DNA from: Obrimoposthia wandeli
Lineage: Eukaryota
Direction: 5' to 3'
Assembly: GCA_977020255.1 (NCBI GenBank)
Contig: CDROCS010000253.1
Span: 868,001 to 932,000, forward strand
Length of the DNA stretch: 64,000 nt
The notes under the pieces are model-generated. The model was not told where the DNA came from. It worked only from the letters and a program-made list of their open reading frames with translations, and searched no databases. Positions 30,329 to 60,772 of the stretch are shown piece by piece. Numbering within the stretch: position 1 is the first letter of the stretch; each line of letters opens with the position of its first letter. A program made the position numbers and the translations under genes.

Positions 30329-30429
30329 CGTTAAACTCTATAAAAGCGGGTGTTATATCAAACGGACTAATTTATTAACCCGGTTGGTATTATTAATCAT
30401 CGTAAAATGGTGTTGATAAAGGTGCGTTT

Positions 30430-30742
30430 TATACCCGCTCCACTTGAAGAGAAAGGATTCAGCTGGAATTATAAACGCCTTTAGGCAAGGCATTGATTGA
30501 AGAGAATAGTTATTCTATTGTCAAAATCAATAACGCAGTATAAAGCGTTTATAAACCAGCCCTTTGGAGAAAACTAAGCAAAAAATACCCGTCGTTACAT
30601 TTGTTGCTAAGGAGGCTACATGGATGGTGCTATTAGAAAATGCAGGAGCTTATTCTCTTGAATAACCATTAACAAAAAATGTGCCTTGATTATGATTCGC
30701 TCAGGTTTCTTGAAACGATCATCTTCAAGTGGAACGGGTATA
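30430..30742 (+). mobile_element. ERIC-like/MITE-like element, copy 1 (313 bp)
   Basis: Terminal inverted repeats TATACCCGCTCCACTTGAAGA / TCTTCAAGTGGAACGGGTATA (1 mismatch); body aligns with copies at 38364 and 60459. Confidence 0.9.
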
Positions 30743-30745
30743 TAG

Positions 30746-31324
30746 TTAAGCAATGGCCTTTTTTTTCTCAACAAATTGTGTGATCGTTTCTTTTAAAAGC
30801 GCAAAATTTAGTGGTTTGCCAAAACAAGTTTCAGCCCCTAATTCAACTATCCTATTTACATTATCATCCGTTAATGCGCCGGTCATTGCAATAACACTAA
30901 TATTTGCTGTTGCAGGCGTACTTTTAATACGGTGGCAAATAGAAAAGCCATTAATGCCAGCCATCATTAAATCTAGCATGACCAAATCAGGCTTAAAAGT
31001 ATGCAGTAGATCGCCTGCATCAAAAGGATTATAAGCTATTTTCATTTTAGCGTGAGGAAAAAGGTTTTCTAGGAACTGAGTAAGCATATCGGCAAATTCT
31101 TTATCATCTTCAATGATTAAAATAGAGAAGCTGTTTTTTACACTTGCTTGAGGTTGAGACATTAAGGATAAGATGTCGTTTTTATCGAAACGCCTATGAC
31201 CACCTGGTGTCATAATAAAAGGTAGTCGACCAATTTGAGCCCAATGGCGAATAGTCGTTGGCGCTACATGCAATAATTTAGCCGCTTCTGCAGGTGTTAA
31301 CAGAGACTTTTTACTTATATCCAA
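30746..31324 (-). CDS. Response regulator with N-terminal BldC/excisionase-like HTH and C-terminal REC domain
   Basis: LLTPAEAAKLLHVAPTTIRHWAQIGRLPFIMTPGGHRRF followed by IIEDD, DLVMLD, AMTG and GKP. Confidence 0.9.
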   Translation of the reverse strand: MDISKKSLLTPAEAAKLLHVAPTTIRHWAQIGRLPFIMTPGGHRRFDKNDILSLMSQPQASVKNSFSILIIEDDKEFADMLTQFLENLFPHAKMKIAYNPFDAGDLLHTFKPDLVMLDLMMAGINGFSICHRIKSTPATANISVIAMTGALTDDNVNRIVELGAETCFGKPLNFALLKETITQFVEKKKAIA

Positions 31325-31451
31325 TCTATTTATCCTTAATAAAATAAACCATTTTTACTATAGCAGTCTATTATTCCTTAATATTAACCTAGATCAATGT
31401 AGTCTTTTTTTTATTGAGCTCAAATCAAATTTCAGCTATATTCCACGAGCA

Positions 31452-31478
31452 TTGTCGTTTTTATCGTTTTTGTCGATT
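31452..31478. promoter_or_regulatory. Three tandem 9-bp direct repeats TTGTCGTTT / TTATCGTTT / TTGTCGATT; putative promoter TTGTCG-19 bp-TATAAT (31470-31500)
   Basis: Counted directly in the divergent intergenic region between the HTH-REC gene and the aer-like gene. Confidence 0.65.
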
Positions 31479-31549
31479 CTTATGAATGGTACGATATAAT
31501 TTTGTAACTAGGATGTAAACCTCATTAATTTATATAACAGGAAATCATA

Positions 31550-33085
31550 ATGACAAAGATAAAGCAATCGATTATCAATGAGGAAGTTAATTTTCAAAAC
31601 GGTGTGGAATTAATTTCTACAACGGATAAAAATGGCGTTATTACCTATGCAAACCCTGAATTCTGTCGAATTGCCGGTTTCTCTCTTGATGAACTTGTTG
31701 GACAACATCATAACATTGTAAGGCATCCTGATATGCCAGCTGATGCTTTTAAAGATTTATGGGAAAACTTAAAGTTAGGCTTACCTTGGCGCGGAGTGGT
31801 TAAAAACCGCTGTAAAGATGGTCGTTATTATTGGGTAGATGCCTTTGTAACACCCATTTTCGAATCTGCTGAACTCATTGGCTATCAATCGGTCAGAACA
31901 CGCCTAGACGATGAGACCAAAAAAAATGCAATATTGTCTTATCAAGCATTACAAAATGGCAAGTCATTAAATAAATGGTACCAAAATGCGACCGTTAAAA
32001 ACGTAGCCTACTGGACAGGAAGTATTACCACGTTAGTCAGCGCGATGTATTATCCATACATGATGTTCTTGTTACCTTTATTACCCTTTATAACGTATAA
32101 AAATGAAATTATAGATACGCCCAAATATCTTAAAAAGCTCGCTAATGAATACGACAGTGTTTCACGCCTAATTTATTGTGGCACTAAACCTCAAGGCATT
32201 GCAGATTTTCATTTAAAGATTGCTGAAGGTAAAATAAAAACAATTCTAGGACGCATTATCGATAGTAGTAATTTACTCAGCTCTGGTGCTAGCAATCTAG
32301 AGGAAGCGGCACGAATAGCTAAAGAAGGCACTGAGCAAGAAACTGCCGAATTACATCAAGTATCGACTGCCGTTGAAGAAATGGTTGCCACAATTGATGA
32401 GGTTGCGCAAAACACAACGTTCACCTCACAAAAAGTTAACCAAGCGCATTCTGATTGTGAAATAGCAACACAAGCCATGCACCTGACCATGGAAAAAGTA
32501 AACCTATTAGCTAAAGAAGTCGCTAACTCGGCATCTTCAGCAACAGAGCTCGCGAGTGAAGTAGAAAAAGTTGGTAGCATTATGCATGAAATTCAGGGGA
32601 TTGCAGACCAAACAAACTTATTAGCACTCAATGCTGCAATCGAAGCGGCAAGAGCTGGAGAGCATGGCCGTGGCTTTTCCGTTGTAGCCGATGAAGTTCG
32701 GGCATTATCAAGTAGAACCCATGCAGCAACAGAGCAAATACAAAGCTCAATATCAGAAATGCAAAATACTTTATTGTCTTGGGTACAAACAATGACTAAA
32801 GGTAAAGAGTCTGCTGAGAGCTGTGTTGAAAAAGCGACAGAAGCTCATAATGTTGTTGATAAAGTTTATTCGTCAATTACTGATATTTCTGACTTAGCGA
32901 TTCAAATATCAACCGCATCAGAGGAGCAAAGCATGGTATCTCAAGAGATCAGCCGCAATATTATTAACATCAGTGATGCTTCTCAAAATAACCTTCATCA
33001 AGCCAATACCGTAGAAAGTGAGACAATAAACATTAAAACAAGAGCCAACGCCCTTGGGGCGTTAGGCCAAGCTTTTAATGGATAA
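31550..33085 (+). CDS. aer: Aer-type PAS methyl-accepting chemotaxis/aerotaxis receptor
   Basis: LISTTD..G.ITYAN..F..IAGF...ELVGQHHNIVRHPDMP, YYWVDAFVTP, short hydrophobic hairpin, IADQTNLLALNAAIEAARAGEHGRGFSVVADEVR. Confidence 0.9.
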   Translation: MTKIKQSIINEEVNFQNGVELISTTDKNGVITYANPEFCRIAGFSLDELVGQHHNIVRHPDMPADAFKDLWENLKLGLPWRGVVKNRCKDGRYYWVDAFVTPIFESAELIGYQSVRTRLDDETKKNAILSYQALQNGKSLNKWYQNATVKNVAYWTGSITTLVSAMYYPYMMFLLPLLPFITYKNEIIDTPKYLKKLANEYDSVSRLIYCGTKPQGIADFHLKIAEGKIKTILGRIIDSSNLLSSGASNLEEAARIAKEGTEQETAELHQVSTAVEEMVATIDEVAQNTTFTSQKVNQAHSDCEIATQAMHLTMEKVNLLAKEVANSASSATELASEVEKVGSIMHEIQGIADQTNLLALNAAIEAARAGEHGRGFSVVADEVRALSSRTHAATEQIQSSISEMQNTLLSWVQTMTKGKESAESCVEKATEAHNVVDKVYSSITDISDLAIQISTASEEQSMVSQEISRNIINISDASQNNLHQANTVESETINIKTRANALGALGQAFNG

Positions 33086-33090
33086 AAATT

Positions 33091-35697
33091 ATGACTGATT
33101 ATGCAAACTTATTAATGTCTTTAACCAATAGTTCATCGCTAGATTCAGGAAGTATGAGCCAGTTAATACAAGAAGGACTTTACATTACCCCTGCTTTATT
33201 TTCTGTCGACCGTGCAGGACTTTGGGTATTAAATAAAGACGAAGAAGCTTACCTTTGTGAAGCCGATTTTTTTGATGGCATAATTAACCATATAGCGCCT
33301 CAACCGTTAACTAAACAAGAAGATGCACAGTCTTTTTCGTTTTTAGAACATACCTCGGAAATTATTATAAACAATAATTTTACCCATGAGTCATTTGGCA
33401 TAAATACGAGCAAATTATTATCTGTATTTCAGCTTTCTTCTATGCTTCTTATTCCTTTACAAATTAAAGGCAAAAATAGAGGCTTTATCTTTTTAGGTGA
33501 CAGTGAAAAAAGTACCGAATGGTCTACCGATGTACTGTTTGCCAGTAGAATTTTAGCGCAGCTGTTTGGACGTGCACTATTAGCACTTGATAATACCGCC
33601 GTTGAAACTAAACTCCAGCATCAATACCAATTGATGAATGAAATAGAGAGACTTGCCAAAATTGGTGGTTGGGACTATGAAATATCAACAGGAAAAACAC
33701 ATTGGACTGATGAAACATATCGGATTTATGGATTATCGCCTGATGAAGAAATAACGCTTGAGCAAACGGCCAAATTTTACAGTTCAGAAGCCAAAGAAAA
33801 AATAAAAAGTGTCTTTGAATTAGCCATAAACCAATTAAAACCTTATCAAGTAGAGTTGCCTTTTATTGATGTACAGGGAAATCATAAGTGGGCAAAAACC
33901 ACGGGGCAAATAAGAAGTAATGCTCAAGGTGTTGCCACACATGTTTACGGGGCGTTCGAAGATATAACCGAACAAAAACGATTACTCGACTCAGAAAGGT
34001 CGACTAATCAAAACTTAAAAACCATTGTTGATAATTTAAACGACAGTATTGTTACTATTTCAAGTAAAGGCATTATTTTATCTGCCAATAGAATGGTGGA
34101 AAAAACATTTGGCTATTTACAGCAAGAGTTGATTGGCCAAAATGTGTCCATATTAATGCCAACGCCCTTTGTTTCTCAACATGATAAATATATGCAGAAC
34201 TACCTCAAAACAGGAGATGCTAAAATCATAGGGATAGGGAGAGAACTTCCTGCGATGAAAAAAGATGGCACAACCTTCCCTATGGAATTATCAATATCAG
34301 AGGTGCTGCACGGAAATGAAAGAGTATTTATTGGCATTGTTCGGGACATAACAGAGAGAAAAAAGGCAGAACAAGATATTCATCAACTTGCTTATTATGA
34401 TGAAATAACAGGCGTAATGAACCGTTATTCTCTTGAACGTGATTTAAAAAAATGTTTCGATAAATCCTTACTCTTAAATGAAAATATCACCACGATGTTA
34501 ATAAATCTGGATAAGTTTTCTCAAGTTAACTTAATTTATGGTGATGATATCGGTGACGTAATTCTAAAAGAAACGGCAAAAAGACTCAATGAACGTTTAC
34601 CTTCATCGGTAGTTACCTATAGAAGCAGTGCCGATAGTTTTTATATTCTTTTAAAATTAAGGGGTGCTGCAGGTTTAGATAACGCACCTATAGTTACCAA
34701 TGAAGAATTAGCAGAACAGATTCTTCATGAAATTAATCAAACCATTATGGTCAATCAGCACGCAATTAATGTACAAGCAAGTATAGGAATATTAAACATT
34801 CCTGCTAAAGAAATAGACTACATCGATATCAAACCTTTACTAGAATTAGCTGTTTTTAATGCCAAAAATAAAGGTGGAAATAATTATGTATTTGCCAGCA
34901 ATAATGACACCAGTTTACTTAAAAGACATTCAGAATTATCGTTAGCAATGAAAAGTAGTCAGTTTATCAGTGAACTCAATATTGTCTTGCAGCCTCAATA
35001 TTCTACCCAAGGTAATATTGTTGGCTCAGAAGCATTGGTTCGGTGGCAGTCCGCATCATTAGGCGGAATATCCCCTGCTGAATTTATCCCCTTAGCAGAA
35101 AAGAATGGCGCTATTATTGAGTTAGGTAATTGGATGATCGATAAAGCCTGTATTTTGTTAACAAAAAGGCGTACATTTTCAAAAGAATCATCCCCTATTT
35201 CTGTCAATATAAGTGCTAAGCAAATTGCTCAGCCAAACTTTGTCGATAACCTTTTAGCTAGCCTTGATAAATACCAAATACCCTACTCTGAACTGTTACT
35301 TGAATTAACAGAAAGTGCCCTGGTTACCGACTTGAAACTTGTCGTGGGCAAAATGGAGTTATTAAAAAGAAAGGGCATTCTGTTCTCAATTGATGATTTT
35401 GGTACCGGATATTCAAGCTTAAATTATATTCATCATTTGCCAATAATAGAGTTAAAGATTGATAAGTGTTTTATTGATGATATAAAAAATGAAACCGATG
35501 ATGTCCCTATCATCAATACCATATTGCAAATGGCGAAGTCGTTAAAGTTAAGAGTTGTCGCTGAAGGTGTTGAATCTAAAGAGCAACTGAATTATTTAGC
35601 TGCGCACGGTTGTGATGTTATACAAGGCTATTACTTTTCCAAACCTCTAAACTCTGCTCAATGGTTAGATAAATGGAAAACTAAGGTAAGCATGTAG
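33091..35697 (+). CDS. GAF-PAS-PAS-GGDEF(degenerate)-EAL protein, probable c-di-GMP phosphodiesterase
   Basis: FixL-like PAS (LMP...QHD.Y...YL.TG...IIGIGRE); GGDEF site replaced by SSADSF; intact EAL, DDFGTGYSSL and AEGVE. Confidence 0.9.
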   Translation: MTDYANLLMSLTNSSSLDSGSMSQLIQEGLYITPALFSVDRAGLWVLNKDEEAYLCEADFFDGIINHIAPQPLTKQEDAQSFSFLEHTSEIIINNNFTHESFGINTSKLLSVFQLSSMLLIPLQIKGKNRGFIFLGDSEKSTEWSTDVLFASRILAQLFGRALLALDNTAVETKLQHQYQLMNEIERLAKIGGWDYEISTGKTHWTDETYRIYGLSPDEEITLEQTAKFYSSEAKEKIKSVFELAINQLKPYQVELPFIDVQGNHKWAKTTGQIRSNAQGVATHVYGAFEDITEQKRLLDSERSTNQNLKTIVDNLNDSIVTISSKGIILSANRMVEKTFGYLQQELIGQNVSILMPTPFVSQHDKYMQNYLKTGDAKIIGIGRELPAMKKDGTTFPMELSISEVLHGNERVFIGIVRDITERKKAEQDIHQLAYYDEITGVMNRYSLERDLKKCFDKSLLLNENITTMLINLDKFSQVNLIYGDDIGDVILKETAKRLNERLPSSVVTYRSSADSFYILLKLRGAAGLDNAPIVTNEELAEQILHEINQTIMVNQHAINVQASIGILNIPAKEIDYIDIKPLLELAVFNAKNKGGNNYVFASNNDTSLLKRHSELSLAMKSSQFISELNIVLQPQYSTQGNIVGSEALVRWQSASLGGISPAEFIPLAEKNGAIIELGNWMIDKACILLTKRRTFSKESSPISVNISAKQIAQPNFVDNLLASLDKYQIPYSELLLELTESALVTDLKLVVGKMELLKRKGILFSIDDFGTGYSSLNYIHHLPIIELKIDKCFIDDIKNETDDVPIINTILQMAKSLKLRVVAEGVESKEQLNYLAAHGCDVIQGYYFSKPLNSAQWLDKWKTKVSM

Positions 35698-38363: not shown

Positions 38364-38678
38364 TATACCCGTTCCACTTGAAGATGCAGGATTCAGCTGG
38401 AATTATAAACGCCTTTAGGCAAGGCATTGATTGAAGAGAATAGTTATTCTATTGTCGAAATCAATAACGTGGCATAAAGCGTTTATAAACCAGCCCTTTG
38501 GGGAGACCTGAGCAAAAAACATTCATCGTTACATTTGTTTTTAAGGACGCTACATGGATGTAACTTATTAGAGAATGCAGGAGCACATTCTCCCGAATAA
38601 CCCTTAACAAAAAAATGTGCCTTGATTATGATTCGCTCCGGCTTCCTGAAACGAGCATCTTCAAGTGGAGCGGGTATA
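38364..38678 (+). mobile_element. ERIC-like/MITE-like element, copy 2 (315 bp)
   Basis: 23-bp terminal inverted repeats TATACCCGTTCCACTTGAAGATG / CATCTTCAAGTGGAGCGGGTATA; best-preserved internal hairpins. Confidence 0.92.
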
Positions 38679-38862
38679 TACATAAATTTTATTTAAGTTA
38701 TTTTTAATGATTATAAATTTAACAACTGCATTCCCCTAGTTCTAGTATCGGTGATAGCAGTGTTCGATCTGAACCATTGGAATGATATTTATTCATTTTT
38801 GGTGTAGTGTGGTCCTGAACGGCAACAAGACTCTTTGATAAAAACTAAAGGAAATAATAATA

Positions 38863-60248: not shown

Positions 60249-60458
60249 GATGTATCCTTAAAGCATATCAGTACATTATTCAGGAGTACGACAATGGATA
60301 TTTTAACTCTTGTATAGTATAGGATATTGGGCCGTTTTTTTCGTGTAGTGCTTCTCTGCTTGGTTGGCAATAGTGGGCAATGCCTCTCTTATTAGGTATT
60401 GCTGGGTTAGGATAACCAAATACGAGGGCACGTTAAATAGATTAGCACATCGACAATA

Positions 60459-60772
60459 TATACCCGCTCCACTTGAAGATGCTCGTTTCAGGAAACCTGA
60501 GCGAATCATAATCAAGGCACATTTTTTGTTAAGGGTTGCTCAGGAGAATGTGCTCCTGCACTCTCTAACAAGCTACATCCATGTAGCGTCCTTAAAAACA
60601 AATGTAACGACGGGTATGCTTTGCTCATTTTTCCCCAAAGGGCTGTTTTATAAACGCTTTATGCTGCGTTATTGATTTCGACAATAGAATAACTATTCTC
60701 TTCAATCAATGCCTTGCCTAAAGGCATTTCTAATGCCAGCTGAATCCTGCATCTTCAAGTGGAACGGGTATA
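60459..60772 (-). mobile_element. ERIC-like/MITE-like element, copy 3 (314 bp, inverted relative to copies 1 and 2)
   Basis: Terminal inverted repeats TATACCCGCTCCACTTGAAGATG / CATCTTCAAGTGGAACGGGTATA; body is the reverse complement of copies 1 and 2. Confidence 0.92.

What the first reader, a model, noticed from the sequence alone, without database searches (positions are those of the whole stretch)
31452..31500. Three 9-bp direct repeats ending in a -35 with a 19-bp spacer: predicted operator of the BldC-like regulator
Seen: TTGTCGTTT-TTATCGTTT-TTGTCGATT in exact tandem, i.e. A/T tracts alternating with TCG. The third unit supplies TTGTCG exactly 19 bp before a consensus TATAAT (31495-31500) facing aer. 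Direct repeats with AT tracts suit BldC-type binding, and 19-bp spacers are the hallmark of MerR-activated promoters (both established). Inference: the adjacent regulator activates this over-long promoter by DNA distortion.
Basis: partly seen in the sequence, partly recalled or inferred. Interest (0 to 1): 0.7.

Follow-up and report, generated by a model that had tools for sequence, protein, structure and literature searches.

The report
Nine-bp operator repeats before aer
Three 9-bp repeats between a Colwellia two-component regulator gene and an aerotaxis-receptor gene are real, conserved and very probably that regulator's binding site. The proposed MerR-style activation through a 19-bp spacer is not supported, because the repeats sit right behind a better-conserved promoter, a position that suggests repression.

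Summary
In detail: TTGTCGTTT, TTATCGTTT and TTGTCGATT lie at 31452-31478, followed by a 19-nt gap and TATAAT at 31495-31500.

The repeat alone is no better than chance. Its conservation is not chance. Every orthologous locus (Colwellia, Thalassotalea, other Alteromonadaceae) keeps 2-4 TTRTCG units at exactly 9-bp period.

The adjacent regulator has a BldC-type winged helix (wing GGHRRF) fused to a receiver domain. Upstream of such genes across Gammaproteobacteria, period 9 is the dominant repeat period, and the repeat core changes with the recognition helix. An earlier scan note on the gene (s1-225571) says the same, and I re-tested it here.

The MerR-type mechanism fails:
- The operator is not inside the spacer.
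- The spacer is the least conserved, indel-prone stretch, so repeat-to-box spacing varies.
- The regulator lacks the MerR dimerisation and effector parts.

A promoter upstream, TTGAGC-17-TATATT (31414-31442), is conserved with a fixed 17-bp spacer and a fixed register to the array. That places the repeats at about +3 to +29. Repression of aer-side transcription is my best guess. A PhoB-like activator or promoter switch remains possible. No RNA data were available to map starts.

The parts
31452..31460 (+). Repeat unit 1, TTGTCGTTT
   Evidence: Conserved as TTRTCG plus a T-tract in all orthologues.
31461..31469 (+). Repeat unit 2, TTATCGTTT
31470..31478 (+). Repeat unit 3, TTGTCGATT.
31414..31419 (+). 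P1 -35 hexamer, TTGAGC (TTGAAT in more distant orthologues)
   Evidence: Found by the promoter scan. It is present with an exactly 17-bp spacer of variable sequence in 12 of 13 distinct orthologues.
31437..31442 (+). P1 -10 hexamer, TATATT. It ends 9 nt before unit 1, giving a predicted start near 31449-31451.
   Evidence: The gap from the -10 to the array is 9 nt in most orthologues, 10 in L024, 0 in L026 and -2 in L027 (in these last two, which carry 3-4 units, the first unit occupies the position that the 9-nt gap fills in the other orthologues).
31479..31494 (+). It contains no palindromic operator.
   Evidence: It is the indel hot spot of the alignment. Only a chance-level 4-bp inverted repeat is present (one search lists nothing here).
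31495..31500 (+).
   Evidence: A homologous box (TATATT) exists only in the close Colwellia clade. Its pairing with a TTGTCG unit at 16-19 nt is only weakly better than shuffles, with 0.02-0.28 of shuffles reaching the observed score, and it is absent in L021, L026, L027 and L059.
31503..31518 (+). Two TGTAA direct repeats 11 bp apart (31503-31507 and 31514-31518): an ArcA/OmpR-type box
   Evidence: Conserved in all aer-linked orthologues. The ArcA consensus and the TGTAA variant are described in PMC4173790. The assignment is an inference.
31384..31397 (.). Conserved box TTAACCTAGATCAA, an FNR/CRP-like half-palindrome
   Evidence: Conserved in orthologues and a perfect TTGATCTAGATCAA before a distant family member (L040). 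As a match with 2 mismatches it is not significant on its own.
31357..31365 (-). Probable extended -10 (TGCTATAGT on the minus strand) of the regulator's own promoter
   Evidence: Conserved as TGnTATAGT or TGTTATAGT in Colwellia orthologues. Inference; no transcript data.
30746..31324 (-). Regulator gene, 192 aa: a BldC-type winged HTH (residues 8-56) plus a receiver domain (residues 68-181)
   Evidence: Pfam HTH_17, MerR and Response_reg. NCBIfam HTH_BldC scores 61.7 bits, the best hit but below its cut-off of 77. BldC structures 6amk and 6ama match at E 1e-10, and the receiver domain of a Colwellia orthologue is solved as 3cnb.
31550..33085 (+). Aer-like PAS-MCP chemoreceptor gene, the likely regulated target. 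A PAS-GGDEF-EAL gene follows at 33091-35697.

Best explanation
The three 9-bp repeats are the operator of the divergently encoded response regulator, whose DNA-binding head is a BldC-type winged helix-turn-helix. By analogy with BldC, three protomers would bind head to tail, one per 9-bp unit. The wing (His43-Arg44-Arg45) would sit in the narrowed minor groove of each T-tract, and the recognition helix (PTTIRHW) would contact the invariant TCG core. Phosphorylation of the receiver domain, probably by the PAS histidine kinase encoded downstream, would control cooperative filling of the array.

The array starts 9 nt after the -10 of a conserved sigma-70 promoter, P1 (TTGAGC-17-TATATT), that points at the aer-like gene. 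It therefore covers about +3 to +29. Its last unit also overlaps the -35-like hexamer of a weaker second promoter-like site, P2. A filled array would block RNA polymerase at both sites, so the regulator most likely represses the aer and PAS-GGDEF-EAL genes.

What is shown: the repeat anatomy, its conservation, the protein's family, and the conservation and geometry of P1. What is inferred: binding itself, its stoichiometry, the transcription starts and the sign of regulation. My odds are about 0.85 that this is the operator of this regulator and about 0.5 that the net effect on aer is repression.
For: - Repeats are exact at the stated coordinates.
- They are conserved as 2-4 TTRTCG units at a 9-bp period in all 13 distinct orthologous regions, while neighbouring sequence diverges.
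- The recognition helix PTTIRHW and the wing GGHRRF are invariant in all regulators that carry TTRTCG arrays.
- The paralogue on the same chromosome (37% identical, helix ...AAVRLW) has its own pair of 9-bp repeats, TTGCGTTTT and TTGCGAATT, before another divergent chemoreceptor gene.
- Period 9 is the unique best self-similarity period upstream of 16 of 23 Alteromonadaceae family members and 13 of 27 class-wide members. Any other period wins at most 3 times in the class-wide sample.
- The repeat core tracks the residue before the conserved Trp: RHW goes with GTCG, RLW with TGCG, RQW with ATCG.
- Published BldC binding uses one protomer per 9-bp repeat, head to tail, with 2-4 repeats, and the wing His46/Arg47/Arg48 reads an AT-rich minor groove (PMC5859096). 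Those wing residues are conserved here.
- The array stays with the regulator gene in Colwellia sp. 12G3, where aer is no longer the neighbour.
- P1 is the scan tool's only plus-strand promoter call.
- P1 is the top-scoring promoter in 11 of 13 orthologues, always with a 17-bp spacer of variable sequence and a fixed register to the array.
- The array is unique on the chromosome at this stringency, which fits a dedicated local operator.
Against: - No binding or transcript data exist. The public runs holding this DNA are kept only as contigs and none is recorded as RNA, so no start site could be mapped.
- P1 is a sequence prediction, however well conserved.
- BldC can activate as well as repress (PMC6428758).
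- Several orthologues keep a -10-like hexamer 16-19 nt after one of the TTGTCG units despite indels. This is what an activator site overlapping a -35 would look like.
- The base-contacting residues of BldC (Lys26, Arg30) are replaced here by Thr23 and His27, so the binding details may differ.
- The NCBIfam HTH_BldC score is below its cut-off.
Confidence: 0.55

Rival explanations
1. Activator or promoter-switch model. The phosphorylated regulator, bound at -55 to -29 of P2 (start near 31507), recruits RNA polymerase in the way PhoB-type regulators do from direct repeats overlapping the -35. At the same time it may shut off P1, so the array would toggle aer between two promoters.
For: - In 9 of 13 orthologues a TTGTCG unit pairs with a -10-like hexamer at 16-19 nt.
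- A 10-bp deletion in one clade shifts the pairing from unit 3 (19 nt) to unit 2 (18 nt), so a promoter-like geometry survives.
- In the paralogue, the array runs into a TTCTAT-17-TATAAA site (my reading).
- BldC activates some targets.
- An ArcA-like box just after the TATAAT would overlap a P2 start.
Against: - The pairing is only weakly better than shuffled sequence, with 0.02-0.28 of shuffles reaching the observed score.
- It is absent in L021, L026, L027 and L059.
- The -10-like box is confined to the close Colwellia clade.
- If the units themselves served as the -35, a protein bound to them would compete with sigma.
Confidence: 0.22
2. The regulator activates an over-long promoter (TTGTCG-19-TATAAT) by MerR-style untwisting and shortening of the spacer.
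For: - The 19-nt gap and TATAAT are present in the window and in one relative, L024.
- The HTH belongs to the MerR superfamily.
- BldC binding shortens and bends DNA.
Against: - There is no operator in the spacer.
- Spacer length varies among close relatives: 19, 17 and 9 nt from unit 3 (18 nt from unit 2), or more than 30 nt.
- The spacer is the least conserved stretch of the region.
- The regulator has no MerR coiled coil or effector domain.
- BldC distorts the DNA that it covers, which here lies upstream of the spacer.
Confidence: 0.06
3. The array serves mainly to autoregulate the regulator's own promoter, from about 100 bp upstream of its predicted start. Control of aer would be incidental or absent.
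For: - The array travels with the regulator gene where aer has been replaced by unrelated genes (L020 and L022).
- In some distant family members the array lies within 45-85 bp of the regulator's start codon (L043).
- There are no indels between the array and the regulator-side boxes.
Against: - The array lies 90 bp from the predicted regulator -10, which is far for direct control.
- Its register is fixed relative to the aer-side P1 -10.
- Both paralogues on this chromosome face a chemoreceptor gene.
Confidence: 0.1
4. The array is not a protein operator. It would be a chance tandem repeat, an UP-element-like T-rich tract, or an element of the aer 5' leader RNA.
For: - The TRF score is ordinary for this window.
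- T-tracts upstream of a -35 can act as UP elements (my knowledge).
Against: - The CG cores are strictly conserved at a 9-bp period across genera.
- The family-wide period-9 arrays have cores specific to each paralogue.
- There is no Rfam match.
- The leader folds no better than shuffles, z = 0.29.
Confidence: 0.05

Closest known systems
BldC of Streptomyces and its operators (whiI, smeA-sffA)
   Same: Both use a small MerR-like winged HTH with the wing motif GGHRR(F/Y). Both have 9-bp direct repeats, 2-4 in number, each made of an A/T tract plus a C/G position. Read on the bottom strand, the units here are AAAAACGAC, AAAAACGAT and AGAATCGAC, which fit the AATTXXXX(C) template in 2 of 3 units. 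BldC sites also overlap or flank promoters (-60 to -10, and -80 to -50).
   Different: BldC is a 68-aa stand-alone domain with a large regulon. Here the domain is fused to a phosphorylatable receiver and appears to have one local site. The base-contacting residues differ: Lys26 is Thr and Arg30 is His, with Arg at the preceding position. An invariant TCG core lies where BldC tolerates any base. The organism is a gammaproteobacterium. No binding data exist.
MerR-family activated promoters (merT, copA, zntA and similar)
   Same: The HTH belongs to the same superfamily. In this one sequence there is a 19-nt gap between a -35-like and a -10-like hexamer.
   Different: The operator is a direct repeat outside the spacer, not a palindrome inside it. 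The spacer length is not conserved. The regulator has no coiled-coil dimerisation helix and no effector-binding domain.
OmpR/PhoB-type response regulators on direct repeats (pho boxes, ArcA boxes)
   Same: These are phosphorylation-controlled, bind head to tail on tandem direct repeats next to or over promoter elements, and vary in repeat number.
   Different: The period is 9 bp rather than 10-11 bp. The DNA-binding fold is different and is N-terminal to the receiver rather than C-terminal.

Membership tests
BldC-type operator (head-to-tail direct-repeat site) | Two or more direct repeats with a 9-bp period | tested here: met
   There are three exact-register units at 31452-31478. The 9-bp period is kept in all orthologues. 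Period 9 is the unique best period in 16 of 23 and 13 of 27 family loci.
BldC-type operator (head-to-tail direct-repeat site) | Each unit is an A/T tract followed at a fixed offset by a C-G pair, AATTXXXX(C) | tested here: inconclusive
   The bottom-strand units AAAAACGAC, AAAAACGAT and AGAATCGAC fit in 2 of 3 units. The conserved element here is a TCG core that BldC does not require.
BldC-type operator (head-to-tail direct-repeat site) | The cognate protein has a BldC-like winged HTH with the wing residues His-Arg-Arg | tested here: met
   Alignment to BldC structures 6amk and 6ama gives E 1e-10 with GGHRRF conserved. HTH_BldC is the best NCBIfam hit but scores below its cut-off, 61.7 against 77.
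BldC-type operator (head-to-tail direct-repeat site) | Cooperative binding with one protomer per repeat | not testable with these tools
   This needs EMSA, footprinting and stoichiometry measurements.
MerR-activated promoter | A 19-20 bp spacer between the -35 and -10, conserved | tested here: not met
   The gap is 19 nt in the window and in L024 only. Elsewhere it is 17 nt (L023, L053), 9 nt from unit 3 or 18 nt from unit 2 (L002, L019, L052), 16 nt (L028), or there is no partner at all (L026, L027).
MerR-activated promoter | A palindromic operator inside the spacer | tested here: not met
   The stretch 31479-31494 holds no conserved inverted repeat and is deleted or expanded in relatives. 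The requirement is stated in PMC5859096 and PMC1526738.
MerR-activated promoter | The regulator has a coiled-coil dimerisation helix and a C-terminal effector domain | tested here: not met
   Pfam finds only the 38-48-residue HTH, followed by Response_reg.
Sigma-70 promoter (P1, 31414-31442) | -35 and -10 hexamers at 16-18 bp, conserved while the spacer sequence drifts | tested here: met
   TTGAGC or TTGAAT, then 17 bp, then TATATT in 12 of 13 distinct orthologues. All -10 positions are at least 80% conserved and the spacer is mostly variable.
Sigma-70 promoter (P1, 31414-31442) | A transcript 5' end 6-8 nt after the -10 | not testable with these tools
   No RNA run holds this sequence. Contigs cannot show starts.

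The most novel reading that the evidence does not exclude
A phosphorylation-gated, BldC-style protein filament on 9-bp repeats sits between two tandem promoters. By covering +3 to +29 of one and the -35 region of the other, it switches the aerotaxis and c-di-GMP operon from one promoter to the other. Conserved FNR-like and ArcA-like boxes flank it. Together they would form a compact three-input redox control region built around a DNA-binding mode so far shown only for Streptomyces BldC.
Probability: 0.15. Interest if true: 0.7.

Novelty: new variant of a known kind. Interest (0 to 1): 0.45.

Why it matters
BldC is the only member of its large family whose DNA-binding mode is known, and the roles of its many homologues are stated to be unknown (PMC5859096). 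My literature searches found no study of the receiver-fused form.

This locus offers a clean, conserved and apparently single-target operator for such a fusion. It comes with paralogue-specific repeat cores and a solved receiver-domain structure (3cnb). That makes three questions directly testable:
- Does phosphorylation drive head-to-tail filament formation on 9-bp repeats?
- How does the recognition helix set the repeat core?
- How does such a regulator control a chemoreceptor promoter?

It also corrects an attractive but wrong rule of thumb, that a MerR-like HTH plus a 19-bp spacer implies MerR-type activation.

Tried and rejected
- **Mapping transcript starts from public reads.** The one run search found six holders, none recorded as RNA and all kept as contigs. 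Laying four of them on 30400-33400 (3,001 letters) gave no starts. It only revealed a multi-copy element at 30430-30745.
- **Relatives of G000.** The assembly has no relatives in the species collection. I used genome contigs, metagenome contigs and handles of related genomes instead.
- **A wider regulon.** No further three-unit arrays turned up. Two-unit matches in four related genomes are at control frequency, and the second hit on this chromosome lies inside a ribosomal-protein gene.
- **A known RNA element or structured leader.** Nothing in Rfam and folding z = 0.29.
- **A sigma-28 promoter for aer.** The CGATA before the TATAAT resembles GCCGATAA only in the closest clade and has no TAAA partner. 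I rejected this by eye.
- **FNR-like box as a significant match in itself.** At 2 mismatches it is common in the window, 100 found against 62 expected. Only its conservation is notable.
- **Literature on BldC-HTH plus receiver regulators.** Nothing found.
- **Searches not run.** I did not run the large protein searches, because the family assignment was already clear.

Full report
**Setting.** The window lies on contig C253, a 4,677,312-bp bacterial contig inside a 1.35-Gb mixed assembly. The closest public relatives of the locus are Colwellia species. Position 31452-31500 lies in a 225-bp divergent intergenic region.
- To the left, on the minus strand, is a 192-aa regulator gene (30746-31324).
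- To the right, on the plus strand, is an Aer-like PAS-MCP chemoreceptor gene (31550-33085), followed by a PAS-GGDEF-EAL gene (33091-35697).
- Downstream of the regulator are a PAS histidine kinase gene and a single-domain receiver gene.

**Observation.**
- The units are TTGTCGTTT (31452-60), TTATCGTTT (31461-69) and TTGTCGATT (31470-78).
- A 19-nt gap follows the last TTGTCG, and TATAAT lies at 31495-31500.

Taken alone the repeat is unremarkable. TRF scores it 35, among 23 similar small repeats in the window. The degenerate two-unit pattern is rare, with 0.14 expected per window. It is essentially unique on the chromosome: the only other near-match lies inside a ribosomal-protein gene.

**The regulator.**
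- Pfam finds HTH_17 and MerR at residues 8-56 and Response_reg at residues 68-181.
- The best NCBIfam model for the head is HTH_BldC, at 61.7 bits against a cut-off of 77.
- The head aligns to the BldC crystal-structure chains 6amk and 6ama at E 1e-10.
- The wing residues that BldC inserts into the AT-rich minor groove (His46, Arg47, Arg48) are kept as His43, Arg44 and Arg45.
- The major-groove residues differ: Lys26 is Thr23, Arg30 is His27, and Thr29 is Arg26.
- The receiver domain of a Colwellia orthologue has been solved as 3cnb, deposited as 'DNA-binding response regulator, merR family'.
- Reading the translation, I see the usual receiver-domain signature residues (acidic pair, Asp117, Thr, Lys).

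**Why the array is this protein's operator.** Schumacher et al. showed that each BldC protomer binds one 9-bp direct repeat, head to tail. Sites hold two to four repeats, each an AT tract plus a C-G pair at a fixed offset (PMC5859096). I collected orthologous loci from species genomes, metagenomes and a second strain in the same assembly.
- All 13 distinct intergenic regions keep 2-4 TTRTCG units at exactly 9 bp. These columns are among the most invariant in the alignment.
- All their regulators share the helix PTTIRHW and the wing GGHRRF.
- The paralogue on the same chromosome (37% identity, helix ...AAVRLW) has TTGCGTTTT and TTGCGAATT before another divergent chemoreceptor gene.
- In 23 Alteromonadaceae family loci, period 9 is the unique best self-similarity period in 16.
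- In an independent class-wide sample of 27 loci it is best in 13, against 0-3 for any other period.
- The core follows the residue before the conserved Trp: RHW with GTCG, RLW with TGCG, RQW with ATCG. This correlation is clade-bound, as co-evolving pairs must be.
- In Colwellia sp. 12G3 two copies of the gene keep the array although aer is no longer next door.

The tests above are my own.

**Why the MerR-type mechanism fails.** Classical MerR proteins bind a palindrome inside a 19-20-bp spacer and realign the hexamers.
- Here the operator is a direct repeat upstream of the spacer.
- The spacer (31479-31494) is the indel hot spot of the whole region. One clade has a 10-bp deletion, another a 2-bp difference, and three metagenomic relatives an insertion of about 20 bp.
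- The gap from unit 3 to the homologous box is therefore 19, 19, 17, 9 or more than 30 nt.
- In Thalassotalea and other, more distant relatives there is no such box.
- The protein has no MerR coiled coil or effector domain.

**What the comparison shows instead.** Immediately upstream of the array lies TTGAGC (31414-19), then 17 bp, then TATATT (31437-42).
- It is the only plus-strand promoter call of the scan tool.
- It is the top-scoring sigma-70 site in 11 of 13 orthologues.
- In 12 of 13 the hexamers are conserved (TTGAGC or TTGAAT, and TATATT), the spacer is exactly 17 bp, and the spacer sequence drifts. That pattern is the expected footprint of a real promoter.
- The array keeps a fixed register to its -10. 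The gap is 9 nt in most orthologues, 10 in one, and 0 or -2 in L026 and L027 (3-4 units), where the first unit occupies the position that the 9-nt gap fills in the others.

With a start near 31449-31451, the units cover about +3 to +29. That is a repressor position.

**The second promoter-like site.**
- In nine orthologues some TTGTCG unit lies 16-19 nt before a -10-like hexamer.
- The 10-bp deletion moves the pairing from unit 3 to unit 2.
- Shuffling shows that this pairing is only weakly unusual and absent in four lineages.

I therefore rank the options as follows: repression of aer-side transcription first, then a PhoB-like activator or P1-to-P2 switch, and the MerR-style model last.

**Other conserved boxes in the region.**
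- An FNR/CRP-like half-palindrome lies at 31384-31397. Its centre is about 41 bp from the start predicted from a conserved extended -10 of the regulator gene (31357-31365, minus strand).
- Two TGTAA repeats lie 11 bp apart (31503-07 and 31514-18), like an ArcA box (PMC4173790).

Both are conserved in the orthologues. Assigning them to FNR and ArcA is my inference.

**Limits.**
- No RNA run holds this sequence, and the contigs laid on it show no starts. Every transcription start here is predicted.
- Binding, stoichiometry, the role of phosphorylation and the sign of regulation are all inferred.

**Verdict.** The site is a new variant of the BldC kind: a receiver-fused BldC head with a dedicated, conserved 9-bp array at a chemoreceptor promoter in a gammaproteobacterium.

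Noticed in passing
window 30430-30745: A multi-copy element of about 315 bp fills the 417-bp gap between the regulator's stop codon and the PAS kinase gene. At least 35 copies at 74-94% identity lie on contig C253, and more on other bacterial contigs. Two further copies lie in the window, at about 38364-38680 and 60457-60772. Another copy abuts the stop codon of the paralogous BldC-receiver gene (C253:3964141-3964412). In Colwellia sp. 12G3 the regulator-kinase gap is only 70 bp.
   Followed up: partly
window 31384-31397: TTAACCTAGATCAA is an FNR/CRP-like half-palindrome. It is conserved in all orthologues and is a perfect TTGATCTAGATCAA before a distant family member (L040). It is placed about 41 bp from the predicted start of the regulator gene, the position of a class II activator site. 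As a bare match it is not significant.
   Followed up: partly
window 31503-31518: Two TGTAA direct repeats 11 bp apart (TGTTA/TGTAA in relatives) are conserved in all aer-linked orthologues. They resemble an ArcA box and may link the aer operon to quinone and redox control.
   Followed up: partly
G000:C253:3964441-3964977 (L003) and its upstream region: A second BldC-HTH plus receiver gene on the same chromosome is 37% identical to the first. It has its own pair of 9-bp repeats, TTGCGTTTT and TTGCGAATT, and a divergent chemoreceptor-like gene. The same module occurs in C. psychrerythraea (L035).
   Followed up: partly
G000 as a whole; contigs C253 and C4567: The assembly is 1.35 Gb in 6,912 contigs, yet the window's contig is a 4.68-Mb Colwellia-like chromosome. 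Contig C4567 carries the same locus from a second strain, whose intergenic region is identical to that of C. demingiae. The bacteria therefore appear to be associates or contaminants of a larger organism's assembly.
   Followed up: no
window 31459-31467 and 31491-31499: The CGATA just before the TATAAT is an inverted copy of the TATCG core of unit 2: a 9-nt inverted repeat, 89% complementary. It could be an oppositely oriented extra unit rather than part of a -10, and it is kept only in the closest Colwellia clade.
   Followed up: no
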